Assembly (NCBI GenBank): GCA_977030845.1
Contig: OZ365112.1
Coordinates: 21,266,001-21,330,000 of the forward strand
Source of the DNA: Fimbriosthenelais zetlandica
Taxonomy: Eukaryota
Length of the DNA stretch: 64,000 bases
Reading direction: 5' to 3'
Numbering within the stretch: the first letter of the stretch is position 1; the number at the start of each line of letters is the position of its first letter. A program made the translations under genes and the position numbers. The notes below the pieces were generated by a model, which was not told the DNA's origin, did not search any database, and was given only the letters and a program-made list of their open reading frames with translations. Of the stretch, positions 1 to 17,100 are shown piece after piece.

Positions 1-287
1 TGCGGGTCCTGCTTCACCACGTTCTCCAGGTTCACCACGTGTTCCTGGTGTGCCAGATTCTCCACGTGGTCCCTGTCCTCCTCTTGGTCCGGCTTCACCT
101 CTTTGTCCTGCTGGTCCTGCAGGCCCGGCTTGTCCTGCTGGTCCAGAAGGACCTGGTTCTCCTCTTGCACCTGGTGAACCTGGAGTGCCTCCTTCTCCCC
201 TTGGTCCAACTTCACCTCTTTGTCCTGCAGGTCCCTGTGGTCCAGATGGACCAGATGGTCCTGGCTGTCCAGCCGGGCCAGGAGAAC
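1..287 (-). CDS. Collagen exon 25 (partial, 32 triplets to window edge)
   Basis: gaattAG acceptor at 288-289; GSPGPAGQP...GERGEAGPA runs off position 1. Confidence 0.93.
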
Positions 288-3200
288 CTAATTCAGATAA
301 GATTTAAAATGGTTCATAAAAAGCTTTATAAGAGCTTTATAAACACTAGTAAACATCATTCAGGAAAAAAGGTTCAGAAAAAGTTCATTGAGAATGGAAT
401 GAAATACAAATTAATCATGGCTATTAACAATCCTTTCTTCATTAAGACGAGACTAAATATTGTGAATAAAGTAAGCGCAGTTTTTTCATAAATCATACCA
501 TCACTTCCTGGGGTTCCAGCCTCTCCTCTAGGACCTCGTTCTCCACGGCCACCTCGTGGTCCAGCTCCGCCTGCAGGTCCTGCAGGTCCAGATGGACCAG
601 GTTGACCACGTTCTCCTGCCCGTCCTGCTGGTCCACTTGGACCGGCTGGTCCAGATTCGCCAGGCTGACCAGATTCCCCACGTGGTCCTGCCGGTCCTGC
701 CGGTCCGGCTGGGCCAGGCTCTCCTCGACCTCCATCAGTTCCTGGCTCTCCTCTTGGTCCCGCAGGTCCAGATGGTCCAGATGATCCTACGAACGAAAAA
801 ATAATAAATTGCGATATATGTAAGCTGGAAAATCTTATATCAGTACTACTGAAAGTTAGTTTGCATAAAATTTACATTGTACTTGAATGTGTTCTGTACA
901 TGTTAGATTTATATGAATTACCTGGAGATCCCGGACTTCCAGGTTCACCCCTTTCTCCGGGTTGACCCCTTTCTCCACCTGGACCTCTTTCTCCCCTACT
1001 TCCAGGTGTTCCAGCTGGTCCAGATGGGCCAGGTGACCCTGCTGGGCCAGCTTCTCCCCTTTCTCCAGGTGTGCCAGGTGTTCCTCCTTCTCCTCTTGGT
1101 CCACGTTCACCTCTGGATCCTGCTGGACCTGATGGTCCAGATTCGCCAGCAGGTCCACTTGGTCCAGGTTGTCCACTTGGACCTTTAAACAACAATACTT
1201 TTATTAACCTATGTCCTATTAAAAATTGTGCAACACTTTCTCTACCAAATCTGACTGATTTCAACTGAAAAGGGTTTAAAATCGATTTCAACTGAAAAGG
1301 GTTTAAAATCAATTTCAACTGAAAAGCGTTTAATTACATTTGGATATGGCTAATCATCTGAGAAAGAAGAAAAACCTACCACTTGGTCCAGCTGGTCCTG
1401 GTTCACCTCTGTTTCCTGCTGGTCCTGCTTCACCTCTTGGACCACCTGGTCCTGCTGGGCCACTTGGCCCTGCCTCACCACGTTCACCTCTTGGCCCTTG
1501 CTCGCCTCGAGGTCCACCTGGTCCTGCTGGACCAGCCGGTCCAGATGGTCCAGCTTCTCCTGCTGGTCCTGCTGAACCAGCTTCACCTCTAGGTCCAGGG
1601 CCACCAGGTCTTCCATCAGATCCTGAAATAGATGTCAATTTGGTAAACATCTCATTAGGATCAGGAAAAATCAGGATCTAAACCATTTTGAAAGGATCTT
1701 AGTTTCATCTATGTTATATACTTAAACTGCTTGATATTATTTGTTATATATTAGGCAATTTATTTCTTTGCATAGTTGCTATCGGAATATCCATCACAGA
1801 ATGGATATGGCCTTGCTGGCTTCAATGTTGCTAATATAATCTGTACTATAAATTACCTGGTGATCCGGCTGTTCCAGATTCACCACGTGGTCCACGTTCT
1901 CCTGGTTCTCCTGGTTGGCCTCTTCCACCATCTGGGCCTCGAGGTCCAGCAGGACCACTTGGCCCAGAAGGACCTGATTCGCCTGGCCTCCCTGCCTCTC
2001 CAGCTGGGCCAGATTCACCACGTGGTCCTCTTTCACCTCGTGCTCCTGCAGGTCCTGCTGGGCCTGACTCTCCTCGTGTTCCTGCTGGGCCAGCTGGACC
2101 TGATGGACCAGCTGGGCCAGGTGATCCGGATGGCCCTTGTTCACCAGGCTCTCCTCTACCTCCTGCAGGGCCGGATGGGCCAGCAGGGCCACTTGGACCT
2201 GATGGACCAGCTGGTCCAGCTTCTCCTCGTGCTCCTCCAGGTCCAGATTCTCCACGTCCTCCGCGTGGACCAGCCTCTCCTCTTGGTCCGGGAGATCCTG
2301 CTGGCCCTGATGGGCCACTGGGACCCGATGGTCCAGCAGGGCCTGCCTCTCCTCTTTCACCACGTGGTGATGGGGGTCCTGCCTCTCCTCTGGGTCCAGC
2401 TGGTCCAGGAGATCCTGAAGGTCCAGCTTCTCCTCTAGGTCCAGGTAGACCGGCAGGACCGGCAGGTCCTGATTATTGAAAGTAGTATTTTTATAAACAA
2501 TGTGACACATTGATATATTCAAATGTTCAGATAAATTATGAAGGAAAAGGGAAAATAATGAAAACAGATTAATCATGAACACAGATTAATAATTGAAAAC
2601 AATAAAATCAATTATACCATACCTGGTGAGCCGTCAGCACCGGGCGATCCTCTTTGTCCTGATTCGCCTCTTGGTCCAGATCCACCAGCTGGACCTGAAG
2701 GTCCAGGGGGTCCTGATGGTCCTGCAGGTCCTCCTTCACCTCGTTCACCTCTAGGTCCTGCAGGTCCTCCTTCACCTCGAGGACCAGCAGGCCCACCAGG
2801 CCCTGACTCTCCTCTCTGTCCAGTAGGTCCTGGTGGCCCAGGTTGTCCTTAAAAGAAAAATAATAATTGTTTAATCCATTGCTAATAGCAGATTCAACGA
2901 AGGTCACATTTCTTACTTCACCTGGAATGCTCCACGTACTAAACAAACTATACATACCTACTCCTCCATCTGGACCTGATTCTCCCCGAGGACCTGATGG
3001 TCCTGGTCTTCCAGCTGGCCCTGCAGGGCCTGCAGGTCCACCTTCTCCTCTTTCACCTGCTTGTCCACGTGGACCTGCTGATCCAGGTTGGCCACGTGGT
3101 CCAGATTCACCAATTCCTCCTGCAGGTCCGGGACTGCCTGGCTGACCACTAGGGCCAGCAGGTCCAGCTGGACCAGCTTCTCCTCTTTCACCTTGGGTTC

Positions 3201-6200
3201 CAGGGGTTCCTGATTCACCGCGAGGTCCGGCTGGACCACTTGGACCAGCCGATCCAGCAGGTCCAGACTCACCTCGAGGTCCCGCGGGTCCTGCTGAACC
3301 TGAGGGTCCAGGTGAACCAGCGGTACCTGGTGTCCCTCTTGGACCTTGTTCACCACGTGGGCCAGCTGTACCGGCTGGTCCTGGAGACCCAGATGGTCCT
3401 GAGGGTCCGGGGGATCCCCTTTCTCCTGAAGGTCCAGCGGGACCAGCTGGGCCAGCCTCACCTCGAGAACCACCTGGTCCAGCAGGTCCAGATTCGCCTC
3501 TCTGTCCAGATGGTCCAGCAGGACCAGCTTCACCTGTTAAGTAAAACAAAATGATCCATTATTTCACTTAATGCACTAGATTGTATAATTAATATATTTT
3601 ATTCATGAAATATGTATAGAACATTAAAAGTAGAAGAGGATTGAACATTTCCTACCTGGGGTTCCTGGTTGACCACTTTCACCACGAGGACCTCTTGGTC
3701 CTGTAGGTCCAGCAGGCCCAGCCTCTCCAGCGGATCCTGGAGTACCTGATGGTCCAGCCTCACCACGTGGCCCAGGGGATCCAGATGGACCACTTGGTCC
3801 AGCTTCACCTCTCGAACCAGCTGGGCCAGATGGACCAGCAGGTCCACTTGGTCCGGATGGACCTGAAGGCCCAGCTTCTCCTCGTTCTCCTGGAGATCCA
3901 GGGGTGCCTCCTTCACCTCTGGGTCCTGGTGAACCTCTTTGTCCAGCAGGACCAGGGGGTCCTGACTCTCCTCTGGTACCAGGTGTGCCAGCAGGTCCAG
4001 ATGTCCCTATCATTCAAAATATAGAACTTTACTATGTCTGTGATAAATGCGTACGTTACCATCAAAGTTATATGATTTTCATAGAGAGTATGTTTAGAAC
4101 TCAATATTAAGGAAAGATGTCAAGAAGTTAAATTATTTTGTATTGTTCGGTAAAATGTTAATCACCTTGTGGACCAGGAGATCCTGGTTGTCCTCTTGGA
4201 CCTCCCTCGCCACGTGTTCCAGCGGGGCCAGCAGGACCAGCAGGTCCAGCGGGACCAGATGGCCCAGGTGACCCTCTTTCTCCTTGAGGTCCTGGTGAGC
4301 CTCCTGGACCAGCCTCACCTCTCGGTCCTGAAGGCCCGGCAGGCCCAGATTCTCCACGCTGACCTCCTGGGCCTGGTGGACCAGCTTCACCTGGAGAGAG
4401 AATAATTATGAAGTGGATTAATTTGAATACATTTTAAGTATTATTCAATTAAAATATCACTAGAGGAAAAATCATTATGACATACCTCTAGGACCTTGAC
4501 TACCAGGCTGTCCTCGTGAACCACCAGGTCCAGCTGGACCTGAGGGTCCACTTTCTCCAGCGGGTCCAGGGGAACCACTTTCTCCTCTACCCCCTCTTGG
4601 TCCAGATGGTCCAGATGGTCCTGCTGGTCCAGCTTCCCCTCGTGGGCCAGGTCTTCCTGCAGGTCCTAATGGACCAGAAGACCCAGCTGCACCAGTTGGT
4701 CCGGCTGGTCCAAGTGATCCTGGTGTTCCAGGTGATCCACCTTCTCCGCGTTCGCCACGTGGTCCACGTTGTCCAGCGGGTCCTGGTGGTCCAGCTTCAC
4801 CTCTAGCACCACCGGGGCCACTTGGTCCAGCAGGTCCTACAAGTGTACATAAAAAGGGGTATCAGTATACCTTGCAATTCTCAGTTCATTTTCATTTCAC
4901 TATGAGAATCACTATAGACATATAGTTGAATTTTCAGTATGAATATCAGGTACTTACCAGAAGGTCCAGGTGATCCAGATTCACCTCGAGGTCCACCTTC
5001 TCCGGCAGGTCCAGCCGGTCCTGATGGTCCAGGTTGTCCTCTAGATCCTGCAGGTCCAGGGGACCCTCCTTCTCCACGAGGCCCTGAAGGACCAGCTTCA
5101 CCTCGAGGTCCTCGTGATCCTGATGGTCCAGCAGGTCCTGATGGTCCAGCTTCACCTGGACCTCCACGTTCTCCAGCAGGCCCTGTTACAAAAATCATTT
5201 ATTTTAAGATTGACAGGAGTGCTTAGTTAAAATGTGAATCAGATTGAGGACGATAAATTTATGCCAATATAGGTTTACACACAAATATTAAACTTCAAAA
5301 TACCTGATGGGCCAGGAAGACCAGGCTGACCGCGAGGTCCACCTTCGCCGGCTGGTCCAGCAGGTCCAGCAGGTCCAGATGGGCCAGATGGACCAAGAGG
5401 TCCTGGCGGCCCAGCTTCTCCTCTTGATCCTGGAGATCCACCTTCTCCCCCTGGTCCTCTCTCGCCTCTTGGTCCCCTTGGTCCAGAAGGCCCAGATGGC
5501 CCAGCAGGCCCTGGAGAGCCAGGTTGCCCTCTTGATCCTGCAGGTCCAGGTGGTCCACTTTCTCCGAGTCCACCAGCAGGTCCTGCTTCACCTGGTTCAC
5601 CTCTTGGTCCCGCTGGTCCAGAAGGACCACTTGGGCCAGGTGAACCCGGTTGACCAATAGGTCCGCCAGGGCCTATATCAAAGAAGGTTACATTACAAAT
5701 AGATGCCAATGTTTGGGCCTAGTGTAGGTATAAATAATTGGTTATCATCGTCAATAGTCATTGAGAGAGAATGACCAACAAATGATCCATGTACTGTACA
5801 CTAAAGAAATATATTACAAACCACTCACCTGGAGCACCTTGGGGACCCGCTTCTCCTCTTTGCCCTCTCTCCCCACCTGGTCCTGGTGGTCCAGCAGGTC
5901 CTGACGGTCCTGATGGCCCAGATGGACCAGGTGGTCCTGCTTCTCCTCTTTCAGATCTAGGACCAGCCGGGCCAGGCGGACCTGCTGGGCCACCTGGGCC
6001 TCGTTCTCCTCTGTTTCCAGATGGTCCGGGTGGTCCTGCCTCGCCAGCAGGCCCTGAAGGTCCTGATGGTCCCGCAGGTCCAGATTCTCCACGTGGACCT
6101 GCACCTCCCGCTGGTCCAGCGGATCCTGGTTGACCTGACGGTCCAGGAGGTCCAGATTCTCCTCTATTACCTCTTGGTCCAGCAGGTCCAGGTGACCCTG

Positions 6201-9200
6201 TGTGAGAAAAAATATTAATATAATATAAAACTAATCATTTTAGAAGAATGTAATTTAGAATGATGTAAGGTTACATCTTTTTGATGTATGTGATTCACTG
6301 CAATAGTCCTTTGGACTTGTCTTTACCTGCAGGTCCTGATGTGCCTTGGGGTCCAGGGCCTCCTGATTCTCCCCTTTCTCCACGAGGTCCCGGTTGGCCT
6401 GAAGGTCCTGCAGGACCACTGGGTCCTGGTGATCCTGGTTGTCCTCTTGATCCGGCAGGGCCAGCTGATCCTGCAGCTCCTGTGGGACCAGAGGGTCCTG
6501 ATGGTCCTGCCGGTCCAGCAGGTCCTGCAGGTCCAGCAGATCCAGGTTCTCCTCGAGGTCCTCCTGGCCCTGAGGGGCCTGAAGGTCCAGAAGGTCCTGC
6601 CTCTCCTCGGGCTCCTCTTGGTCCAGCTGGTCCGGGTTGGCCTATAAATCAAATAATATCACCAATGATTTCCCAATCGGATTCCTAAATGGCTGATGAA
6701 TTACTAGAATTACTAGTAATTAATAGTAGTAGAATTACTAGAATTACTAATAGATAATACCAGAGGCGACACAAACAGACAAATAGACAAATCATGATTA
6801 CCAGTTTCTCCACCGGTGCCAGGCTCTCCTCGTTGACCCCTAGGTCCGCTCGGACCAGCTGGGCCACTCGGACCAGGTCTGCCATCACTGCCAGCAGGTC
6901 CTGGTCCACCAGCCTCCCCTCTTGGACCTGGTGAACCTGATTGACCCCGTTCTCCAGCTGGTCCAGGGGGTCCTGATTCCCCTGATGGTCCAGGTTGTCC
7001 TCGTGGTCCCGAAGGTCCAGAAGGTCCTGAAATATGAATAGTGAGTACCATGTTAATAATTATTATAAACAATAAACAGGCTACAAATCAGTTAATCCGC
7101 TGTATATTTGGAATTTTATAGACTTGAAGGTTACACACCAGCAGGGCCTGGAGAGCCACCAGGTCCAGCTTCTCCTCGTGGGCCACGAGGTCCACCGGGC
7201 CCAGAGGGTCCAGGTGGACCACTTTGTCCTACAGGACCTGCTGGGCCAGATTCTCCTCTTGGGCCGCCAGGGCCAGGTTGTCCTCTTTCTCCTGAAGATC
7301 CTGGCTGACCTCTTGTTCCAGGTTCTCCTCTAGGTCCCCCAGGACCAGCAGGACCAGAAGGTCCTCCTGGTCCACGTTCTCCTGATGGCCCAGCTGGCCC
7401 TGGTGGTCCTGATTGACCACGGGGTCCTGCACCTCCTCGAGGGCCAGCGGGTCCTGCTTCACCTGCAGGTCCTGCTGAACCGGGTGATCCTAGAAAGGAA
7501 AGCAAGTTTTAATTAGATGAATGTGTTAATCAGATAATTACAGTGAACTGCCTTTCATAGTGAACACATTTCTTCCACTCAAGTACCCACCCACCTGATG
7601 TGCCCTGGCCCAAGCCATTGAACACTTGCTCTAATTTATTTAAATTTATAATAAGGATTAGTATTCTAAAGTAAACAAATGGAGAGAAATTGGATAATAA
7701 TGGAATACCTTGAGGTCCAGGGGGTCCAGCCTGTCCACGTTCACCAGCCAGTCCGCCTGCTCCTGGAGATCCAGCAGGACCAGAGGGACCGGAAGGTCCA
7801 CTTGGTCCTGGCAGACCCGAAATACCTCGTTCTCCTTGAGGGCCACCTGGACCAGATGGCCCTGGTTGGCCTCTACTTCCAGGTGTACCACGTTGACCAG
7901 GTGGTCCACCTTCCCCTCGCTCTCCTTGAGGTCCAGCAGGACCTGAAGGTCCAGGCTGACCTCGTGGTCCTGAAGGTCCACCTGCTCCTGTTCGACCCGC
8001 AGGTCCTGGTGGTCCTGAAGGTCCAGAGGGACCTGCTCCACCTCGTTCACCTGCTGGGCCGGGTGGGCCGGATGAACCTAGAGAATGAAAATAATGAGCA
8101 TTTAAGAACTGACAAAAATGGCTTAGCTCCTGAGAACTGCTTATATGAGTTAATTACGATTAAATTTGAGACATTGTGATAAATATAATGAAAAATGCAC
8201 TATATGCAAGCACGCATTTTTAGTTCAAGAAAAGGTATACCTGCTGGTCCTGATGGGCCAGAAGGTCCTGCTGGGCCGGATTCACCACGTCCACCAGCTG
8301 GTCCTGAAGGTCCGGCAGGTCCTGGTTGTCCACGGGGTCCTCCAGGTCCGAGTGGACCTGATGGTCCAGGCGGACCAGCCTCTCCACTGGGTCCTGATGG
8401 TCCAGCTTCTCCTCTGGGCCCCCTGGGGCCTGATGGCCCTGAAGGTCCTGCTGGACCACCCTCTCCTCTTTCACCAGATGGTCCTGATGATCCAGGTGGT
8501 CCTGCAGATCCACGTTCTCCGCTAGGTCCAGCTGGCCCTGGTGGTCCAGATTGGCCTCTTGGCCCTGAAGGGCCAGATGGCCCACTTGGTCCTGGAGGCC
8601 CGCCTTCACCAGTTTCCCCTCTTGGTCCAGGAGACCCAGGTTGACCTCTGGATCCCGCTGGTCCAGCCTCTCCACGGGTTCCTGTTCAGAAAGTTATTTT
8701 TTTCATTAAATACATATATTATATGAAATATTGTCAGAATTTTTAAAATGCACTAGGGTTTACTAATGTTCAACAATTATGGTAAATCAATTTTCGTGTC
8801 ATTCAACTTTAGTGATAAAAATGTAAGAACGAACCTGCTGGTCCAGCCGGACCACTTGTTCCTGGTGTTCCCCTTTCTCCTGATGGTCCTCGAGGGCCAC
8901 CTGGTCCAGGTGGACCGGCTTCGCCGCTTTCCCCACGCTCTCCTGCAGGTCCTGCAGATCCTGGTGATCCTCTTTCACCAGAAGGTCCCCGGGGTCCTGG
9001 ACCACCAGATGGACCAGGTGATCCTGGTTCTCCTCTTCCACCTGCCGGTCCTCGGGGTCCAGAAGGTCCAGAGGGACCAGATTCGCCAGGTTGTCCACGT
9101 TCACCACTGGATCCACGTGGCCCTGCTGGGCCTGGAGGACCGCCTTCTCCGGTTTCTCCTCTTGGTCCAGAGGGACCTGCTCCCCCTCGGGGTCCACTGG

Positions 9201-12200
9201 GACCAGAGGGTCCACTGGGTCCTGGGGGTCCGGCCTCGCCTGTTTCTCCTCGTGGTCCACCTGGTCCAGAAGGTCCAGGTGAGCCTGATTCACCTCTTGG
9301 GCCTAATGATTATATATAGATAATTAGGAAAAACAAATTACTATACTGAGAAGTGAGACATACACAGAAACATATTTAACACTATTTACATCTGAAACCC
9401 CTAGGTATTTTTTTATTATGGGTAGTCGATACAAAAAATATATATAGATCTGTATGTACAGTATTTCAGTCAAAATTTGTGATTTTACCTCCAGGTCCTG
9501 AAGGTCCAGAGGGGCCCGAGGGTCCAGAGGGACCACGTTCACCACGAGAGCCTGGTGGACCGCCTGGTCCTAGGGGTCCTGATGGGCCTGGGGGTCCTGC
9601 TCCTCCACGGTTCCCTCCCGGGCCAGGTGGTCCTGCTGGGCCTGCAAAAGTGGTAATGTGATACTATTAATATTAACAAATATTTGGGTGAACCATGTTA
9701 TTTACACAAAATTATTACGAATAGCTTATAGCTCAGAGGAAATTCCTCGCAATATTTAAAAAAAATTAAAATTCGATTTCATGATTTTAGTATTTGAATC
9801 TTATGAAATATCTTTCTTACCTGGTCCTCCTCTGGGTCCTGATGGTCCTGGAAGACCTGATTCACCGCGTGGCCCAGATGGTCCTGATGGTCCCAATGGG
9901 CCAGAGGGTCCTGAGGGGCCAGCTGGCCCTCGAGATCCAGGCCCTCCTAGAGCTCCTGATGGTCCTGACTCTCCTCTAGGTCCTGATGGTCCAGGTGGTC
10001 CAGAAGGACCTGCTGGTCCTGCTGGTCCGAGTGTTCCTGTTGGACCTGAAGGTCCTGCCGGTCCTGGCTGTCCACGTGGGCCAGATGGACCAGATGGTCC
10101 AGAAGATCCTGGTAATCCTGATTCACCACGTGGACCAGATGGACCTGATGGGCCAGAAGGTCCTGGTCTCCCAGAGGGACCAGGAGATCCTGACTCTCCT
10201 CTTGGGCCTGATGGTCCAGCATCTCCACGAGGTCCTGATGGGCCACCAGCACCTGTTCTTCCTGGACCTCCTGATGGTCCTGCTGGTCCACGAGGTCCCG
10301 ATGGTCCTGATGGACCACTTGGTCCTGGTAATCCTGAAGGTCCGCGAGGTCCTGGTGCACCACTTGGGCCTGCACCTCCCCTTGGTCCAGATGGACCAGA
10401 TGGACCACTTGGTCCTAATGGTCCCGACGACCCACTTGGTCCTCTTGGTCCTGATGGTCCAGGTGGTCCCGACTCTCCAGTTTGGCCATCTGGTCCGGAT
10501 GGTCCGGCGGGTCCAGCAGGGCCTGATGGGCCTGGTCGACCTGGGAATCCAATGGTCCCTGTAGTACCCGGTCTACCAGGTTGGCCAGGGAGACCTGAAG
10601 GACCTCTCGGGCCTGATGGGCCCAGAGGTCCAGGGGGACCACTAGTGCCTGACTCTCCCCGTGGGCCTGGTGGGCCTCCAGGTCCCAGTGGACCTGCTGG
10701 ACCTGGTCCTCCGGATGGTCCCGCTGGTCCTGCACCTCCAGGCCGACCGCTTTGTCCCGGAAAGCCTGGCAATCCTCGTCCACCACTTGGTCCTGCGGGT
10801 CCAGGGCCTCCACGGACACCTGATGGTCCAGCTGGGCCAAGTGGTCCTAAACGTCGAAAGAAAAATAATAATTTATCATACAGTAATTCTCCAAGATAAA
10901 CACATATAATGTTCTACCATACATGTACTAAATATTAATAGCTGAATCAGAATTGCTAATGTATTGGGAAAATAACCAATAGTGAATAAGGATATAATAA
11001 AATACTACCTGAAGGTCCAGGTCTGCCGTCAGGCCCAGAAGGACCTGGTCGACCAGGTCGCCCAGCTACACCAGTTCCGCCTCGTCCACCTGGTGTTCCA
11101 TCACGTCCAGGTGGGCCTGGTGGCCCAGGTGAGCCGGGAACTCCAGCTAAATAAAGGAAAATAAAATGAGTAAATTTGCTGCTGTAGAAAGGTGTAATCG
11201 CTATTAATGAAATCTAGAGCTGGACAAATAATTTGCAAGATAAAGACACGTCCATTCTTTTTACATTTCAAAATTTACTTCCTTAAATACCACATACGAA
11301 ATGACTTATGAAAGAATTACTTTTATCCAAAATATAAAATAATGATGAGCGTAGTAAATAGATAATTTGATATAACATGACAAATATAGCACTTGAAATT
11401 AACCAATCTTGCACTACTAAAAGCTTAAAATTAGTTGGGCATGGATCCGTATTTCAGAACAGCATTTTGATATTTACGAATAGCTCTTGGGGTACAGGCT
11501 GTAGCAATGATATCATCCAACATTTCGGGCAGCTCCCAGTAGTTCCTTCGAATGATATAAAATCGCTCTGCTGGATTTCTAGTTGCGATTCTCTGAAGTA
11601 CAGGTATTGGCACTCTGCCTTCTAAATCCACTGCTATAATGTGGGTTGGTTTATCTACCAAAGAAGCCTGGTATCCTCGCAAAGTATTTATATCGGCTGA
11701 TGGGTTTCCAGACAAAAAGACAACGGCAATATTGGGAAATCGATCTTCATCGCGATTTCCACTCCTTGGAGGCGTTGCAAAAACTGTATCAGTCAGAATT
11801 TGCATTCCTGCATTGATGTTGTTTCCACCATTGTTCCGTTGCATCAAAGCTACAGTTTGAGAATTCTCCAGAGAAGTTTGATATCTGTTCAGGAGAAATT
11901 CTACTCGCCCACTGTCAGCATATCGTGACACAGATATACGATTGCGGTTGCTCCCGACATCCAGATTTTTGATGGTTTCAATGGTCAGATTCTTCATAAT
12001 AGAGAAATATTCAAGACGGGCACTCCCATGGAGCAGGAAAGCCCAGTCCAGGTAGCCACATGGAATATCTGAAAAACCATGCCTTTTGTTAGTGTCTTGC
12101 ACATTTTTTTTCGCGCACTGCATCGGCAAGACGCAGGAAATTTGCGCTCATTATTATTTATATCCGCGCGCTGCGCAACATTTAGTTTGATGGAGTTCAA

Positions 12201-14113
12201 GGATGACGGAAGTTGTTTTCTTTTTCTGCTGAAATAAAGATCAAGCATCGCAAAGCGCGGCACATGTAAAAGGGCAGCTGAACTAAAGTGTAAAAATCAT
12301 TATATTTATTAAGCCAATAAAAGCAGTACACAACGCAAAAAGAATCCTTCTTTTTATTTTTTATACTTTAGTTAAAGAAATTATATTCCTTTTTTCAGGA
12401 GACTTTGTTGTCTCATCCTTAAAGTAACTTGGGTTTTTCATATTTCAAGATAGAACATAATCTACATTGTATGTACGTATTGACTGTGAATAATGATATC
12501 TGCCAGAATTCTAATATAATAGAAGGATTTTTTGTGCAACATAATATTAGATGCATTTGGTGATTCAGAAAGACTAGTTTAGCGTGCTTGGCCTCTGCTG
12601 GGACTGAAAATCCTACAATAATCGATTATGTGTAATGGGATTGCTGCAAAAGCCACTGAAAAGAAAACACTTTCAATTTTAGTATCGCTGCTGTTGTAGT
12701 CTACAATGTATGTATTTCCAAATGCATGCTGATGATGATGTGGATGACATCTCCATTTCCTTAAAAGATATCGCCGCGCTGATACACGTATGACAATTGA
12801 TTTAAAAATTGATTCTGTTTTCCCCCATGATTCGGGAATCGTAGCATAATCACTTTAATAGGTTATAAATACATAGAGACCATTTAGATTTATCTGGAGG
12901 AATTTTCTCTACTTCTTGGTCTTAAATGAGTGCAACATCATCAGAAATATATATTTACTTCGTACTGCTGCTGGGCAGATCCTCCCAAGAATTTGCCTAA
13001 TGATGTCAGGCATTCGTTGATTGAAGTCCCCAGCGATGACAGCGTTAATTGGATTGCGGTCTTGGTCAATAATCCTCAAGTTTTCTGGATCGAGGTTCTG
13101 GTTGTTGGTCAGGTAAACTGCAATCAACTCAATACCTGCGTCCCTGGCTAGATCTACAGCAGTATCTAGTTGACTACGGGATAGGGAATTCTGCCCTGAT
13201 GTGAAGACAATGGCCACTTTCCGAGCATATGGCTTGACACCATTTACAAAGAACTGGTTCCTCAGTGCGTTAATGAGGGTCACCTGATTCGATGGGGCAG
13301 ACCCACCAGGACCAACATTTCTGTCTATGGCATCGATTATAGCCCGGTTTCCAGTTCCCTGAGCTTGACGGAATGTCAGTGATCGATCGAATACAACCTC
13401 GCTGTGGTACATGACCAAACCGATTTGTGTCCAGAAATCAGGCCGAACGGTAAAACGATCAACCAATTCCTTTAGCAGGCCCTTCACACCTCTGTTCCAA
13501 CTCTCGATCTGCATGGATTGATCCACAGCAAATACAACGTTGAGCAGCTCAGGACAGTACTCAGGCCTATCGCCTATAAGAGGTGTGGATGAACAAAGAG
13601 CAGTGAGAAAACACAGGCAACTTGGTGATTTACAGTAAAAATATATTTACTGTCAGGCAGCGTGACAATTAGATACAGGGATTTAGTAACAACATACATA
13701 TAACATAACATCCTGGCATCGGATTTCATTTTGACTTTCACACAGTCACGCACAATGACACTCTGCATTCAAATGCACTAGAATTCCTCACTTAAAGTAA
13801 GGATATAATCTATGACTGAAACAAGCACTTGTAAATACTGCATTATTTTGAAGCCTACTGCATTGCAACTGATGGTAAAAGCGCTGATTGTGGTTGGGAG
13901 AGCCCAATGCTTTAAAACTGAATACAAGTTTAGGTGGTGAGATAATGAAAAATCACGGTTCACGCATGATAGGTGTGGATGTGAGGACCTACCTTGTGCA
14001 TCTACAGTAGCAAAGATTCCTAAAAATACCACCAGACAAATTAAGAGCCGAGCCATGTGGCCTGGCAGTAGCCGTGGCCCAGGGGGCCGCGATGAGAAAG
14101 ATCCAGGTGGCAT
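1..14113 (-). CDS. Giant vWA-vWA-collagen (secreted; 25 coding exons in window, 3' end beyond position 1; >=3046 aa)
   Basis: Manual splicing, all GT-AG phase-1 introns, exons in transcription order: 14114-13993, 13573-12959, 12068-11478, 11146-11009, 10846-9821, 9641-9489, 9302-8835, 8681-8241, 8077-7709, 7489-7139, 7026-6802, 6641-6327, 6197-5829, 5672-5304, 5182-4958, 4836-4486, 4390-4166, 4006-3656, 3533-2958, 2847-2623, 2468-1857, 1622-1380, 1182-922, 786-499, 287-<1. Gives one open frame: signal peptide, 2 vWA, 874 Gly-X-Y triplets. Confidence 0.95.
499..786 (-). CDS. Collagen exon 24 (288 nt, 32 triplets)
   Basis: Gly-X-Y; ttcgtAG / GTATGA. Confidence 0.93.
922..1182 (-). CDS. Collagen exon 23 (261 nt, 29 triplets)
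   Basis: Gly-X-Y; tttaaAG / GTAATT. Confidence 0.93.
1258..1333. repeat. Intronic 27-bp minisatellite (ATTTCAACTGAAAAGGGTTTAAAATCR) x2.8
   Basis: Units start at 1258, 1285, 1312 inside collagen intron 1183-1379. Confidence 0.9.
1380..1622 (-). CDS. Collagen exon 22 (243 nt, 27 triplets)
   Basis: Gly-X-Y; atttcAG / GTAGGT. Confidence 0.93.
1857..2468 (-). CDS. Collagen exon 21 (612 nt, 68 triplets; one Gly->Ser)
   Basis: Gly-X-Y except GPP-SPR-GER (Ser codon 2368-2370); taatcAG / GTAATT. Confidence 0.93.
2623..2847 (-). CDS. Collagen exon 20 (225 nt, 25 triplets)
   Basis: Gly-X-Y; ttttaAG / GTATGG. Confidence 0.93.
2958..3533 (-). CDS. Collagen exon 19 (576 nt, 64 triplets)
   Basis: Gly-X-Y; ttaacAG / GTATGT. 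Confidence 0.93.
3656..4006 (-). CDS. Collagen exon 18 (351 nt, 39 triplets)
   Basis: Gly-X-Y; atgatAG / GTAGGA. Confidence 0.93.
4166..4390 (-). CDS. Collagen exon 17 (225 nt, 25 triplets)
   Basis: Gly-X-Y; tctccAG / GTGATT. Confidence 0.93.
4486..4836 (-). CDS. Collagen exon 16 (351 nt, 39 triplets)
   Basis: Gly-X-Y; cttgtAG / GTATGT. Confidence 0.93.
4958..5182 (-). CDS. Collagen exon 15 (225 nt, 25 triplets)
   Basis: Gly-X-Y; gtaacAG / GTAAGT. Confidence 0.93.
5304..5672 (-). CDS. Collagen exon 14 (369 nt, 41 triplets)
   Basis: Gly-X-Y; gatatAG / GTATTT. Confidence 0.93.
5829..6197 (-). CDS. Collagen exon 13 (369 nt, 41 triplets; one Gly->Ser)
   Basis: Gly-X-Y except GPR-SER-GEA (Ser codon 5953-5955); cacacAG / GTGAGT. 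Confidence 0.93.
6327..6641 (-). CDS. Collagen exon 12 (315 nt, 35 triplets)
   Basis: Gly-X-Y; tttatAG / GTAAAG boundaries. Confidence 0.93.
6698..6753. repeat. Intronic degenerate 9-bp repeat (GAATTACTA)
   Basis: gaattactagaattactag...gaattactagaattacta in intron 6642-6801. Confidence 0.65.
6802..7026 (-). CDS. Collagen exon 11 (225 nt, 25 triplets)
   Basis: Gly-X-Y; atttcAG / GTAATC boundaries. Confidence 0.93.
7139..7489 (-). CDS. Collagen exon 10 (351 nt, 39 triplets)
   Basis: Gly-X-Y; tttctAG / GTGTGT boundaries. Confidence 0.93.
7709..8077 (-). CDS. Collagen exon 9 (369 nt, 41 triplets)
   Basis: Gly-X-Y; tctctAG / GTATTC boundaries. Confidence 0.93.
8241..8681 (-). CDS. Collagen exon 8 (441 nt, 49 triplets)
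   Basis: Gly-X-Y; gaacAG / GTATAC boundaries. Confidence 0.93.
8835..9302 (-). CDS. Collagen exon 7 (468 nt, 52 triplets)
   Basis: Gly-X-Y; cattAG / GTTCGT boundaries. Confidence 0.92.
9489..9641 (-). CDS. Collagen exon 6 (153 nt, 17 triplets)
   Basis: Gly-X-Y; ttttgcAG / GTAAAA boundaries. Confidence 0.92.
9821..10846 (-). CDS. Collagen exon 5 (1026 nt, 114 triplets)
   Basis: Perfect Gly-X-Y; AG acceptor 10847-10848, GTAAGA donor 9820. Confidence 0.95.
11009..11146 (-). CDS. Collagen exon 4: start of triple helix (15 triplets)
   Basis: tttatttAG|CT GGA GTT CCC ... CCT TCA G|GTAGTA; [16 protein letters not shown]... Confidence 0.92.
11478..12068 (-). CDS. Collagen exon 3: von Willebrand factor A domain 2
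   Basis: 591 nt, phase 1-1; [17 protein letters not shown]...[11 protein letters not shown]...[12 protein letters not shown]...THIIAVDL...TACTP; flanking Cys pair. Confidence 0.9.
12959..13573 (-). CDS. Collagen exon 2: von Willebrand factor A domain 1
   Basis: 615 nt, phase 1-1; [17 protein letters not shown]...[10 protein letters not shown]...[10 protein letters not shown]...GIELIAVYL...GRICP follows the vWA strand/helix pattern with a flanking Cys pair. Confidence 0.9.
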
Positions 14114-14114
14114 T
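13993..14114 (-). CDS. Collagen coding exon 1: signal peptide ([20 protein letters not shown]|Q)
   Basis: Acceptor ttttgcAG at 14115-14116, donor G|GTAGGT at 13992; in-frame ATGs at 14113 and 14056; 15-residue hydrophobic core and VDA|Q cleavage-like site. Confidence 0.85.
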
Positions 14115-17100
14115 CTGCAAAATAAATTATACAACATAATCAAATTATGTTTTTATTTTTATTGGGTAAGATACTCTTATCAAGTTTAGAATTTTGCTTT
14201 TAGATAGACTTTTAGAGATTATGAGGAAATCTAGCTTTATGTAAAAAAAAAAAATGGAATGTAATCCATTATATAATCAATTAATTGTAATATAAAGCCC
14301 CAGGCAGGTATTCCTGCCGCTAGCCAATACACTATGACTTTTATACGCTAATTAATTCCTTCAAATTTTAGCCTCCGGGGGAATTTCTTTTGTATTTATT
14401 AGTGCAGAGATAATGTAGAGAAGGAGGCTACCTTCTAGCTCATTGGTGTATCACAGACTGCTTGTTCTCTCCGTTCTGAGGGGGGAGCCTTGCCTGGACA
14501 ACTGCCCCTTTCGCCCTCTGGCGTCAAGGACAGATAAACAGACAAGGACCAAAAAATAACACGTCACAAAGAGGCCTCGAAAAAGCCTGTCGCCTCTCAG
14601 TGAGCTGGAAAAGAAAAACAAATCATGCATAAGATTAAATTCAGTTAAAAGTAACTCTTGGGTTTTACATCGAACAAATCGTTTTTAGTCAGTATTTGAA
14701 TCGGTGCTTTAATGTGCATAGCCTTTTTTGGTAACTCTACATCGCTATTAACATTCTTGCTATCGCACGCACACTTAGATATAGTTGAGTTTGAAAGTAA
14801 CGGGAAGACAATGTCATCGGACCTGAATATATAATTATCCGTAAATTTATAGACTGACGATTCAACTGGATTCATGAATCCTAATAATTATTACATTCCT
14901 ATAATTTTACCAGTCACTTCCCGATAGGCCTAATATTATATCAGTGTCATCCACTTTTCACAATAACATAGAACTTTCTGGATCCTGCCTAATCTATCTT
15001 TACCTTACCTTGTCTCGTCATGCCTTACCGGTAATTAAAAGAATTATTTAATACTTTCGCCATGTCATATTTTATAAATCATTCCTGATAGTGTTCATTC
15101 GAACAGATTATGTACATGTAATTTATTACTTTCGACGGATGAAGTTCTTTAACATTTTATCTAAATTACACTATCAGGGTCTGACATTCCATTGGGTACA
15201 TTTGGCAGGTGTTGTTGAGGCCTATTTCTTTCTGTCCACGCTCTATGTACTTCGAAGCATGGGACGTCCTCTATGCTTCTATCACACTCATTCCCAAACG
15301 AAACTCACCCAACCGGTTTTCACCATTAAGCGCCATGTCCAGACGCTCTCGCACCCAGTCTATTACCTTTCGTAACACCTTCATTACACATACCTTTGCC
15401 TTTTTCTCCTGCATATAGACATGGCAGGGATACATCTAAACATTTTCAAGCCTCTTCTAAGGCGTCAATAGTATTGTTTCTTTGGTATTTTTCGTACGAG
15501 TTGCCGGTGTAGGACTATGGGAAATGAATGATGACCTGTCCTAAATTGTGTATACTACAGTATATATAATCCTGATTTTTCATTACTATAACAAAACCAC
15601 CAGACTTTATACTAATCCGGGCCACAATAATCGCGAATCCCAAACTTACAATTGTTTGTTGACAATACTTGTTGCCATGGGACAATAGTTGACATTTTCA
15701 TATTACATAAGGTTTGTAATGATCGGGTTAATGATGAACAGATTATGAGTATTGACTGGTAATGCGACCTCTTGACCTCATGCAGCACTGATACTCAAGT
15801 TGGGACCATTTTCCGAGCCTTTTAACTATTATAATTACATTATCCTACCAATTATATACTTATCGGGGGGAACGTGTATACTCTATGCCAGGCTCGCACA
15901 GGTCTGTGCCTTCTAATTAAGGCTGTTCTGAGAATTACATGAGGTACCCTGTAATAACCTCAAAACCCATGAACCCTTTCATCGCCTATATTTATTATGG
16001 ATGGTACATTGAGCTATATAGTGTGATGGGAAAGCGACAGGATTCACTATAGAAGATCTTATGAAAACTGTGAATGGTGAACTAATATTTCTAGTCCATT
16101 CCTCTAGAATTTTCCTGGGTATCTTAGACTTATTCCACATCATCTTTTCAACTGATTTAGCTTAAGATATTTGAAATAAGACAGTCAGAATATATCTAGT
16201 GGAACTATCAGGGTATACACGATTTCTCATGGTGCACGAATAATTAGAATATGATAAGGCAACTAGTAATTCATAATTTCTTAATGAGAATGTTCTAAAA
16301 TGTAATTGATGGGTTTGTAGTATATAAGACACAGTGAAGCAGAGTTCATATTCCCATTACACAAACTTAATTGCCTCACATGTATAGATCTTCGTCTTTA
16401 GATCCATGCAAACCTTACACATTATCTTTCCTTTATGGACCATAAATCTAATGACCTTATACTAACACACACGCACCCTTTGCGCACCAGCTACATGTAG
16501 ATAAATTTTCAGCTGATGCCCAGATCTCTTTGTTGAATTTTTTGTTGAATAAGCAGTAAATAAATTAAAACGTACAAATATATTACGAACAAGATTAAAC
16601 TTAGCTTGAGCAATGCAACAGCTAGCAAAACTAGCAAATTCATCGCGACATATACATAATTATTTTAATTTTGTACTGGTTAACTTTAATAAAGATATCA
16701 ACCCTGCTGATTTCGCATCGAATCAACTTTTACGGTTGAGGCTAATTTCTTATTACCTAACCTTTAAGGGAGCTAGGTCATCTATCTTGTAATATTTGGT
16801 ATAGGGTCCTGCCTCAGCTTTAGATGACAAGACTGCTAAACTTTATGGTTGTTGTCATGCCAACATGCTGTCATCTACAGATGAACGCCTCTCTAAACCA
16901 GAATGGCTACATGCTGGTAAGAATGGGATCTCCTCACCCCAGATGACCCCTCCTGACATCTGGCAGGATGATCCCTATACAGAAGTCAAATCCAGGACCA
17001 TTGAAAAGGTTTGATATGTTTGGTTAGCACTATGTCATAGTGGATATATCTTCTCAGTGGGGGAGACAGACAAGGCCCAATGCATTTTCACACATGCAGA

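What the first reader, a model, noticed from the sequence alone, without database searches (positions are those of the whole stretch)
1..11146. Helix chemistry: Pro mostly at X, Ser/Ala/Arg at Y, and no Lys, Cys, Met, Trp, Tyr or His in 2,622 residues
Seen: GPS, GPA, GPR and GE(S/A/R/G) dominate; in exon 5, 71 of 114 triplets have X-Pro and 24 have Y-Pro; I found no K, C, M, W, Y or H in any helix exon, and Glu only at X, mostly as R-G-E. Established: vertebrate collagens rely on Y-position 4-Hyp and on Lys/Hyl for lysyl-oxidase crosslinks and glycosylation; earthworm cuticle collagen was reported to contain Gly-Hyp-Ser and Gly-Hyp-Ala (X-position Hyp) and O-glycans on Ser/Thr; Y-position Arg is helix-stabilising. 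Inference: this chain would be stabilised by X-position hydroxylation, Ser O-glycosylation and Arg/Glu pairing, and cannot be LOX-crosslinked along this part, which implies a partner prolyl hydroxylase of unusual specificity.
Basis: partly seen in the sequence, partly recalled or inferred. Interest (0 to 1): 0.75.

Follow-up and report, generated by a model that had tools for sequence, protein, structure and literature searches.

The report
Lysine-free giant worm cuticle collagen helix
The window holds the first third of a gene for a collagen about 2.5 micrometres long, of the type known from annelid worm cuticles. Selection has kept its helix free of lysine and of every other cross-linkable or easily oxidised residue, and arginine-glutamate pairs hold it together instead.

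Summary
There are 2,622 helix residues on the minus strand. Exon 5 has 71 X-Pro and 24 Y-Pro in 114 triplets. There is no K, C, M, W, Y or H, and all 155 Glu are at X, 100 of them as R-G-E.

The gene runs about 26 kb beyond the window:
- It encodes a signal peptide, two VWA domains, a helix of about 8,640 residues (about 2.5 µm), a transmembrane segment and a tail.
- The 8,531 helix residues I modelled have no K, C, W, Y or H.
- The convergent neighbour gene and a full-length orthologue show the same lack.
- The orthologue's helix aligns without a single gap. It differs at 2,536 residues, and none of those changes gives a forbidden residue.
- Two fibrillar collagens of the same genome carry 4-5% Lys.

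"Pro mostly at X" holds only for the N-terminal 30%. X-Pro falls from 60% to 14% along the helix, while Y-Pro and R-G-E pairs rise.

The best-conserved sites are Y-Arg (about 90%), X-Glu (about 88%) and N-zone X-Pro (79%). Y-Ser sites are barely conserved (16-34%).

Arg/Glu pairing and the lack of lysyl-oxidase substrates are therefore supported. X-hydroxylation, Ser glycans and a special hydroxylase remain untested.

Giant annelid collagens with X/Y-Pro tables were published in 2025, so this is a new member of a known kind. Earlier notes of this scan flagged sibling giant collagens elsewhere in this genome.

The parts
13990..14056 (-). Exon 1 (approximate): start codon and signal peptide [21 protein letters not shown]; donor not fixed
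   Evidence: ORF 13778-14143 read. The hydrophobic leader was judged by eye. There is no RNA support.
12909..13526 (-). Exon 2 region: first VWA domain (ORF limits, splice sites not fixed)
   Evidence: Pfam VWA, E 1.4e-14
11431..12129 (-). Exon 3 region: second VWA domain (ORF limits, splice sites not fixed)
   Evidence: Pfam VWA, E 7.4e-16
11009..11146 (-). Exon 4: first helix exon, 45 helix residues, includes GPPGPP
9821..10846 (-). Exon 5: 1026 nt, 114 triplets, 71 X-Pro and 24 Y-Pro
9489..9641 (-). Helix exon 6, 153 nt
8835..9302 (-). Helix exon 7, 468 nt
8241..8681 (-). Helix exon 8, 441 nt
7709..8077 (-). Helix exon 9, 369 nt
7139..7489 (-). Helix exon 10, 351 nt
6802..7026 (-). Helix exon 11, 225 nt
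6327..6641 (-). Helix exon 12, 315 nt
5829..6197 (-). Helix exon 13, 369 nt; holds the Gly-to-Ser imperfection GPR-SER-GEA, conserved in the orthologue
5304..5672 (-). Helix exon 14, 369 nt
4958..5182 (-). Helix exon 15, 225 nt
4486..4836 (-). Helix exon 16, 351 nt
4166..4390 (-). Helix exon 17, 225 nt
3656..4006 (-). Helix exon 18, 351 nt
2958..3533 (-). Helix exon 19, 576 nt
2623..2847 (-). Helix exon 20, 225 nt
1857..2468 (-). Helix exon 21, 612 nt; holds the Gly-to-Ser imperfection GPP-SPR-GER, conserved in the orthologue
1380..1622 (-). Helix exon 22, 243 nt
922..1182 (-). Helix exon 23, 261 nt
499..786 (-). Helix exon 24, 288 nt
1..287 (-). Helix exon 25, cut by the window edge (441 nt in full). 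The gene continues for 35 more exons: 34 helix exons, then the exon for the membrane segment and tail, which ends near G000 C13:21239396.

Best explanation
**What it is.** Positions 1-14056 (minus strand) are the 5' third of a gene for one chain of an annelid-type giant cuticle collagen.

**Architecture.** Signal peptide, two VWA domains, a triple-helix region of about 8,640 residues with only five small imperfections (about 2.5 µm when folded), a 28-residue linker, one transmembrane segment and a tail of about 150 residues.

**Shown: the helix chemistry is a selected design.**
1. It excludes every residue that can be cross-linked, oxidised or bind metal (Lys, Cys, Tyr, Trp, His, almost all Met). 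The helix therefore cannot be a lysyl-oxidase, dityrosine or disulphide substrate.
2. Its positive charge is all Arg, nearly all at Y. Its negative charge is mainly Glu, nearly all at X. They are balanced (763 R against 745 E+D) and mostly arranged as R-G-E.
3. It has three chemical zones.
   - The N-terminal 30% (the part in the window) is imino-rich Gly-Pro-(Ser/Ala/Arg).
   - The middle 60% is Gly-(Ser/Gln/Thr/Glu)-Pro interleaved with R-G-E.
   - The last 40 triplets, next to the membrane, are Gly-X-Thr.

**Inferred.**
- R-G-E gives interchain Arg-Glu salt bridges. These play the clamp role that K-G-E and K-G-D play in other collagens, keeping a 2.5-µm helix from unzipping locally while it folds from the membrane-proximal C-terminus.
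- The lack of covalent cross-link sites keeps the cuticle fibres extractable and able to slide and be renewed.
- By analogy with earthworm cuticle collagen, many X-Pro of the N-terminal zone are probably 4-hydroxylated, and some Ser and Thr are probably glycosylated.
For: **Gene model.** Consistent AG|G...G|GT junctions, exon lengths in multiples of 9 nt, and no stop in 25.6 kb of spliced coding sequence. Two VWA domains. The donor GTAAGT and a phase-matched acceptor join the last helix exon to the transmembrane and tail exon. In a relative's intronless 27.5-kb contig, helix, membrane segment and tail are one reading frame.

**Composition.** No K, C, W, Y or H in 8,531 residues. The same holds in the convergent paralogue: 8,601 residues with 0 real K, 0 C, 0 W, 1 H and 3 Y. 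It also holds in partial relatives.

**Selection.**
- The rebuilt orthologue helix is exactly 8,531 residues and aligns gaplessly.
- It has 2,536 substitutions, 2 at Gly positions and none to K, C, W, Y or H. dN/dS is 0.17 with dS about 1.5.
- The mutational null gives 15% forbidden targets.
- Control fibrillar collagens of the same genome have 4-5% Lys and 9-11% GPP triplets.

**Charge pairs.**
- R-G-E: 514 observed against 158 expected, z = 36, 18% of all Y-G-X steps, 459 of 518 conserved.
- Y-Arg is 0.90-0.92 conserved and X-Glu 0.87-0.89.
- The four Gly substitutions and the one-residue deletion all sit at identical positions in both species. Each is followed by (R/Q)-G-E clusters. This matches the 'salt-bridge knots' around interruptions in PMC11923368.

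**Zones.**
- X-Pro falls from 60% to 14%, Y-Pro rises from 19% to about 30%, and R-G-E rises from 6 to 25 per 100 triplets.
- The trend is the same in gene A, gene B and the orthologue.
- Y-Thr is 30-38% in the last 40 triplets of A and B.

**Literature.**
- Giant collagens of 7,700-8,900 aa occur in alvinellids and an earthworm (PMC12403961).
- Annelid cuticle collagens have very long helices and globular domains (PMC11766948).
- X-4Hyp is especially high in earthworm cuticle collagen (PMC8233474).
Against: - No RNA or protein evidence from this animal. No sequencing run was listed, so expression in the epidermis and location in the cuticle are inferred.
- The organism is not identified. 'Annelid' rests on the match to published giant collagens and on earlier scan notes.
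- Hydroxylation and glycosylation cannot be read from DNA.
- The paralogue (gene B) shares the Lys-free chemistry and the gradient but not the R-G-E excess (1.18x). R-G-E clamping is therefore not a universal requirement of these helices.
- In host-guest peptides Arg-Gly-Glu is, from my memory of Persikov 2005 (not checked here), a weaker stabiliser than Lys-Gly-Glu.
- A C-terminal membrane anchor is not part of the classical description of a secreted cuticle collagen.
Confidence: 0.78

Rival explanations
1. The helix is held mainly by 4-hydroxyproline at X and by O-glycans on Ser. It therefore needs a dedicated prolyl 4-hydroxylase that acts on Gly-Pro-Ser/Ala/Arg.
For: - X-Pro of the N-terminal zone is 79% conserved, more than Y-Pro at 44%.
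- GPP is strongly avoided, at 0.26x expected. X-Pro therefore rarely sits in the canonical Pro-Hyp context.
- Earthworm cuticle collagen has Gly-Hyp-Ser (Goldstein and Adams 1970, title seen) and unusually high X-4Hyp.
- The genome has several P4H alpha-type genes, including a close pair on C25 and C10.
Against: - X-Pro dominates only 30% of the helix.
- Y-Ser sites are 16-34% conserved and exchange with Ala.
- X-4Hyp showed no positive correlation with melting temperature.
- The P4H count (at least 3 to 5) is ordinary for an animal.
- Nothing in the sequence shows the specificity of any hydroxylase.
Confidence: 0.35
2. It is a giant membrane-anchored collagen with another role, not the bulk fibre collagen of the cuticle. 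Examples would be anchoring microvilli, muscle or chaetae to matrix.
For: - It has a C-terminal transmembrane segment and a conserved cytoplasmic tail.
- Earlier scan notes report several other giant collagens in this genome, so another one could be the bulk fibre.
Against: - The predicted length (2.5 µm), the terminal globular domain and the Lys-poor, Hyp-rich, Ser/Ala-rich composition fit the purified cuticle collagens.
- Two similar chains lie side by side, as expected for a two-subunit collagen. That Nereis cuticle collagen has two subunits is my recollection and was not checked here.
- The anchor could be cleaved after assembly.
Confidence: 0.12
3. The missing residues are a by-product of recent amplification of a Lys-free repeat unit or of mutation bias, not of selection.
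For: The helix is low in complexity.
Against: - Orthologues differ at about 45% of non-Gly sites with saturated synonymous change, yet show none of the forbidden residues in 2,536 substitutions. The expected share is 15%, which gives P far below 1e-100.
- The paralogue cannot be aligned with gene A at all, yet it has the same exclusions.
- Lys is one G-to-A transition from the 671 Glu codons.
Confidence: 0.02

Closest known systems
Annelid giant cuticle collagens (Alvinella, Paralvinella, Riftia, Nereis, Arenicola, earthworm). Biochemistry by Gaill, Mann, Timpl and colleagues, 1991-1996. Gene predictions of 7,700-8,900 aa in PMC12403961 (2025).
   Same: - Very long, nearly uninterrupted helix. 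About 8,640 residues are predicted, which is about 2.5 µm.
- A globular end.
- X-Pro 32% and Y-Pro 26%, inside the range of the published table (0.33-0.40 and 0.22-0.33).
- Composition rich in Ser, Ala, Glu and Arg and poor in Lys.
   Different: In the papers I could search, I found none of these described:
- the complete absence of K, C, W, Y and H, shown to be under selection;
- the three-zone gradient;
- the R-G-E system;
- length conservation to the residue;
- the C-terminal membrane anchor.
Earthworm cuticle collagen (Gly-Hyp-Ser / Gly-Hyp-Ala, X-position 4Hyp)
   Same: The N-terminal 30% is dominated by GPS, GPA and GPR, the sequence context in which X-4Hyp was found in earthworm.
   Different: The remaining 70% of this chain uses Y-Pro at least as much as X-Pro. 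Hydroxylation here is untested.
K-G-E / K-G-D interchain salt-bridge 'clamps' of collagens (Malcor et al. 2025, PMC11923368)
   Same: - A Y-basic, Gly, X-acidic motif far above expectation.
- It is highly conserved.
- It clusters next to helix imperfections.
   Different: - Arg fully replaces Lys, and Asp is almost unused.
- The motif makes up 18% of all Y-G-X steps, against 3-6% reported for KGE and KGD.
Riftia cuticle collagen with glycosylated Thr at Y (Mann et al. 1996)
   Same: The last 40 triplets before the membrane have 30-38% Thr at Y.
   Different: Thr at Y is only 1.4% over the whole chain. Glycosylation is untested.
Vertebrate fibrillar collagens and their homologues in this genome
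   Same: - Gly-X-Y helix.
- Exon lengths in multiples of 9 nt.
- Glu preferred at X and Arg at Y.
   Different: - No COLFI domain.
- Introns split the Gly codon (phase 1).
- GPP is 2% of triplets instead of 9-11%.
- Lys is 0% instead of 4-5%.
- The helix is eight times longer.
Membrane-associated collagens XIII, XVII, XXIII and XXV
   Same: A collagen helix tethered to the cell by one transmembrane segment.
   Different: Those are type II proteins with an N-terminal anchor and interrupted short helices. This one has an N-terminal signal peptide and a C-terminal anchor.

Membership tests
Annelid giant cuticle collagen | Triple helix of 1.5-2.5 µm, several times longer than a fibrillar collagen | tested here: met
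   45 + 8,531 + about 62 helix residues with five small imperfections. At 0.286 nm per residue this is about 2.5 µm.
Annelid giant cuticle collagen | Globular domain at one end of the thread | tested here: met
   Two Pfam VWA domains upstream of the helix.
Annelid giant cuticle collagen | Composition: about one third Gly, high imino acid, Ser, Ala and Glx, very low Lys, Tyr, His and Met, no hydroxylysine | tested here: met
   The published amino-acid tables themselves could not be read here; the comparison rests on PMC11766948, PMC12403961 and my memory.
Annelid giant cuticle collagen | Made by the epidermis and located in cuticle fibres | not testable with these tools
   No RNA or DNA run was listed for this sequence.
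Annelid giant cuticle collagen | 4-hydroxyproline at X (earthworm type) and/or O-glycosylated Ser or Thr | not testable with these tools
   Only the sequence context (GPS, GPA, GPR, GxT) can be shown.
Fibrillar collagen (COLFI clade) | C-terminal COLFI propeptide | tested here: not met
   The COLFI search of the genome hits only C13:0.21 Mb and C1:26.13 Mb. The C-terminus here is a membrane segment plus a tail with no Pfam match.
Membrane-associated collagens (XIII/XVII/XXIII/XXV type) | Type II orientation with the anchor near the N-terminus | tested here: not met
   N-terminal signal-like leader and a hydrophobic segment after the helix, followed by RKLRY.
Nematode cuticle collagen | Short interrupted Gly-X-Y blocks flanked by conserved Cys, with Tyr cross-links | tested here: not met
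   No Cys or Tyr in the helix, which runs for 8,531 residues with five small imperfections.
Lysyl-oxidase-cross-linked collagen | Lys or Hyl in the helix as acceptor sites | tested here: not met
   Zero Lys in the modelled helix of A, in B and in the orthologue. A LOX gene is present in the genome.

The most novel reading that the evidence does not exclude
The giant cuticle collagen is built as a chemically inert, non-covalent cable with three zones, each stabilised in its own way.
- A membrane-proximal Gly-X-Thr nucleus.
- A long R-G-E-clamped body, in which Arg has taken over the role that Lys plays in other described collagens.
- An N-terminal third of Gly-Pro-Ser/Ala/Arg. Its conserved X-prolines would be hydroxylated by a dedicated enzyme. 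It may correspond to the large collagenase-resistant fragment isolated from Nereis cuticle collagen in 1977.

The exclusion of Lys, Cys, His, Tyr, Trp and Met would then be an adaptation. It would let an exposed, never-moulted cuticle stay un-cross-linked, unreactive to oxidants and quinones, and continuously renewable.
Probability: 0.3. Interest if true: 0.65.

Novelty: new member of a known kind. Interest (0 to 1): 0.45.

Why it matters
Annelid cuticle collagens are the longest collagen molecules known, and nearly all knowledge of them comes from protein chemistry of the 1960s to 1990s.

A complete gene, a paralogue and a gapless orthologue turn that chemistry into sites that can be tested:
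- which prolines (X or Y, and in which zone) are hydroxylated;
- whether Arg-Gly-Glu can replace Lys-Gly-Glu as the clamp that lets a 2.5-µm helix fold;
- how a collagen works with no covalent cross-link sites at all.

A Lys-, Cys-, Tyr- and His-free helix stabilised by ion pairs is also a natural template for designed collagen materials that must not react or cross-link.

The earthworm-like X-Pro chemistry is one zone of the molecule, not its overall character.

Tried and rejected
- **RNA evidence.** Two run searches (the N-terminal region and exon 5) listed no run of any kind.
- **Word-index protein search** with the second VWA exon: no hit at E <= 1e-5 in the allowed length range.
- **Exhaustive representative search** with the membrane and tail exon: 31 hits. 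Nearly all are last-exon fragments of 130-250 aa, and none is a full-length giant protein. The orthologue had to be rebuilt by walking along an ENA contig in about 9-kb steps. One relative (P0002) had no DNA available.
- **Pfam on the tail and on exon 1:** no family.
- **Pfam 2OG-FeII_Oxy_3 against the genome:** only weak exon-sized hits. A catalytic exon from this genome worked better.
- **Gapless alignment of gene A with gene B** at offsets of -90 to +90: no block above 30% non-Gly identity. A shared register or heterotrimer could not be tested.
- **Periodicity of Glu:** only the long-range gradient and weak 2- and 4-triplet signals.
- **Classical papers** (Goldstein and Adams 1970; Kimura and Tanzer 1977; Gaill 1991 and 1995; Mann 1996; Adams and Lamon 1977; Muir and Lee 1970) are not held. 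Only titles in reference lists were seen. The supplements of Taga 2021 are not held.
- **Identity with Alvinella pompejana** rejected. Its assembly is 367 Mb with N50 21 Mb, against 447 Mb here.
- **Integrin-type motifs:** no GFPGER, one RGD.

Full report
**1. The observation**

A six-frame scan for Gly-X-Y runs finds them only on the minus strand, from 11146 down to position 1.
- Apart from the acceptor of the first helix exon, each run is bounded by ...AG|G at its start and G|GT... at its end. The introns are phase 1 and split a Gly codon.
- Every complete exon is a multiple of 9 nt.

Splicing the 21 exons from 10846 to 1 gives 2,577 residues without a stop.
- The composition contains no K, C, M, W, Y or H.
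- Pro fills 54% of X and 19% of Y. Ser, Ala and Arg fill 24%, 24% and 21% of Y.
- GPS, GPA and GPR are the top triplets.
- All 155 Glu are at X, and 100 of them follow Arg-Gly.
- Exon 5 has exactly 71 X-Pro and 24 Y-Pro in 114 triplets.

**2. The gene**

Upstream on the same strand lie two ORFs with Pfam VWA domains (E 7e-16 and 1e-14) and an exon with a signal-like leader.

The window is G000 C13:21266001-21330000. I fetched the DNA below position 1.
- The helix goes on for another 26 kb.
- The 55 helix exons I modelled give 8,531 residues with no stop. Exon 4 and a last helix exon add about 107 more.
- Only three junctions depart from phase 1.
- The last helix exon ends at a GTAAGT donor. 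A phase-matched acceptor opens the final exon.
- That exon encodes a 28-residue linker, a 24-residue hydrophobic segment followed by RKLRY, and a tail of about 150 residues.

The protein is thus signal peptide, VWA, VWA, a helix of about 8,640 residues, a membrane segment and a tail. At 0.286 nm per residue the helix is about 2.5 µm long.

**3. The whole helix, and a correction to 'Pro mostly at X'**

The 8,531 residues hold no K, C, W, Y or H, and only 4 Met and 4 Phe.

The position table, however, changes along the chain. The values below are the first tenth against tenths 8-9.

| Measure | First tenth | Tenths 8-9 |
|---|---|---|
| X-Pro | 60% | 14-17% |
| Y-Pro | 19% | about 30% |
| Y-Ser | 33% | 4% |
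| X-Ser | 7% | 29% |
| Pro per triplet | 0.79 | 0.43 |
| Charged residues per triplet | 0.33 | about 0.60 |
| R-G-E per 100 triplets | 6 | 25 |

- X-Pro rises again to 33% in the last tenth.
- Over the whole helix X-Pro is 32% and Y-Pro 26%.
- The last 40 triplets before the membrane are different again, with 30-38% Thr at Y.

The window happens to hold the X-Pro zone.

**4. Is it selection?**

Four lines of evidence say yes.
- **Controls in the same genome.** The two COLFI fibrillar collagens have 4.0% and 4.9% Lys, plus Met, His, Tyr and Trp. GPP makes up 9-11% of their triplets, against 2% here. A lysyl oxidase gene is also present.
- **The paralogue.** A second giant collagen gene lies tail-to-tail with this one (G000 C13:21188617-21231102, plus strand). 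It has one VWA domain and a similar membrane tail at 30% identity. Its 8,601 helix residues have no real Lys, Cys or Trp, 1 His and 3 Tyr. It shows the same N-to-C gradient, although it can no longer be aligned with gene A.
- **The orthologue.** I rebuilt the orthologue from an ENA contig and its 99.3%-identical haplotig by walking upstream from the tail.
  - Its helix is exactly 8,531 residues, with the same exon lengths apart from one extra intron.
  - It aligns without a gap and differs at 2,536 residues, only 2 of them at Gly positions.
  - It contains no K, C, W, Y or H.
  - dS is about 1.5 and dN/dS is 0.17.
- **The mutational null.** From this gene's own codons, 15% of single-step missense changes would produce K, C, W, Y or H, and 5-8% Lys alone. 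The absence of any among 2,536 changes cannot be chance or recent repeat ancestry.

A relative's intronless 27.5-kb contig, read as a transcript, has 3,333 helix residues with the same exclusions. There the helix, membrane segment and tail are one frame.

**5. What is conserved**

Site by site against the orthologue:

| Site | Conserved |
|---|---|
| Y-Arg | 90-92% |
| X-Glu | 87-89% |
| X-Pro, N-terminal zone | 79% |
| Y-Ala | about 50% |
| Y-Pro | 44-47% |
| Y-Ser | 16-34% |

- R-G-E occurs 514 times against 158 expected (z = 36). It makes up 18% of all Y-G-X steps, and 459 of 518 sites are conserved.
- Arg (763) balances Glu plus Asp (745).
- The four Gly substitutions and the one-residue deletion sit at identical positions in both species. 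Each is followed by (R/Q)-G-E clusters.
- Malcor et al. 2025 (PMC11923368) show that K-G-E and K-G-D are over-represented in collagens, flank interruptions and raise kinetic stability. Here Arg has completely replaced Lys in that motif, at three to six times the usual abundance.
- Gene B lacks the R-G-E excess (1.18x) and favours G-E-R, G-R-D and D-G-R instead. This is unexplained.

**6.

- **'Cannot be LOX-cross-linked': supported**, and true of the whole helix.
- **'Arg/Glu pairing': supported** by enrichment and conservation. The salt bridge itself is inferred.
- **'X-position hydroxylation': plausible for the N-terminal zone.**
  - For: X-Pro is conserved, GPP is avoided (0.26x), and there is an earthworm precedent.
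  - Against a stabilising role: it is untestable here, and the papers I could read do not support it.
- **'Ser O-glycosylation': cannot be tested.** The low site conservation argues against site-specific roles.
- **'A partner hydroxylase of unusual specificity': open.**
  - Three loci carry the P4Ha_N domain (C13:4.42 Mb, C25:16.87 Mb, C10:5.04 Mb).
  - A P4H catalytic exon hits at least five loci.
  - This is an ordinary number, and these counts are lower bounds.
  - From memory, not checked here: Adams and Lamon (1977) described an earthworm epidermal prolyl hydroxylase with unusual substrate preference. If so, the idea itself is old.

**7. Comparison with what is known**

Reviews describe annelid cuticle collagens as having very long helices, globular domains and unusual compositions (PMC11766948).

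The Alvinella genome paper (PMC12403961, 2025) reports collagen predictions of 8,859 aa in Alvinella, of 7,719-8,689 aa in Paralvinella transcriptomes, and one in Eisenia.
- Its table gives G-P-Y at 0.33-0.40 and G-X-P at 0.22-0.33. This gene (0.32 and 0.26) falls within or at the edge of that range.
- It also notes the higher X-Pro of earthworms.

So the kind, and even the X/Y-Pro statistic, are published. In the papers I could search I did not find any of the following described:
- the proven exclusion of six residue types;
- the three-zone gradient shared by paralogue and orthologue;
- the Arg-only clamp system;
- the length conserved to the residue;
- the C-terminal anchor.

Earlier notes of this scan had already flagged sibling giant collagens and the anchor in this genome. 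I re-derived the neighbour gene and the anchor independently.

**8. Verdict**

- This is a new member of a known kind, with several new sequence-level features.
- It is moderately interesting to collagen specialists, mainly because it makes old biochemical puzzles addressable site by site.

Noticed in passing
G000 C13:21188617-21231102 (+), i.e. 35-77 kb below window position 1; loci L005-L010: A second giant collagen gene lies tail-to-tail with this one. It has one VWA domain, a helix of about 8,600 residues and a similar membrane segment and tail (30% identity). It has the same Lys-free chemistry and N-to-C Pro gradient, but no R-G-E excess.
   Followed up: partly
L004:3396-3965 (-), G000 C13:21239396-21239965: The last exon encodes a linker, a transmembrane segment and a tail of about 150 residues ending ...GSSFL. 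The tail has 31 relatives in the representative library, almost all of them called as isolated small proteins. No Pfam family matches it.
   Followed up: partly
Orthologue rebuilt from L017 and L026-L030 (ENA ERZ25767047, ctg38949 and ctg38632): Helix length is conserved to the residue (8,531) between the two species, and no indels are needed. Gene A's 765-nt exon (window -8744 to -7981) is split in the orthologue into 432 + 333 nt by one extra intron.
   Followed up: yes
L018 (JGI 3300036281, contig Ga0373523_00001, 27,526 nt): This intronless contig carries at least 3,333 helix residues, the membrane segment and the tail in one frame. It looks like an assembled mRNA of about 27 kb for a giant collagen in a sample labelled as a metagenome.
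   Followed up: partly
Last 40 triplets of gene A (window about -25811 to -25330) and of gene B: Thr fills 30-38% of Y positions next to the membrane, and Y-Pro almost disappears in A. This is a Riftia-like Gly-X-Thr patch at the end where folding should start.
   Followed up: partly
G000 C25:16867852-16871790 and C10:5040648-5044940 (L013-L016): Two closely related P4H alpha-type genes, 77-82% identical in a catalytic exon, lie on different chromosomes, beside a more distant one at C13:4.42 Mb. The pair looks like a duplication, possibly lineage-specific.
   Followed up: partly
window 14200-64000: The rest of the window is almost empty of long open frames: only two ORFs of 130 aa or more, neither of them convincing. 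The collagen gene therefore borders a gene-poor stretch of about 50 kb.
   Followed up: no
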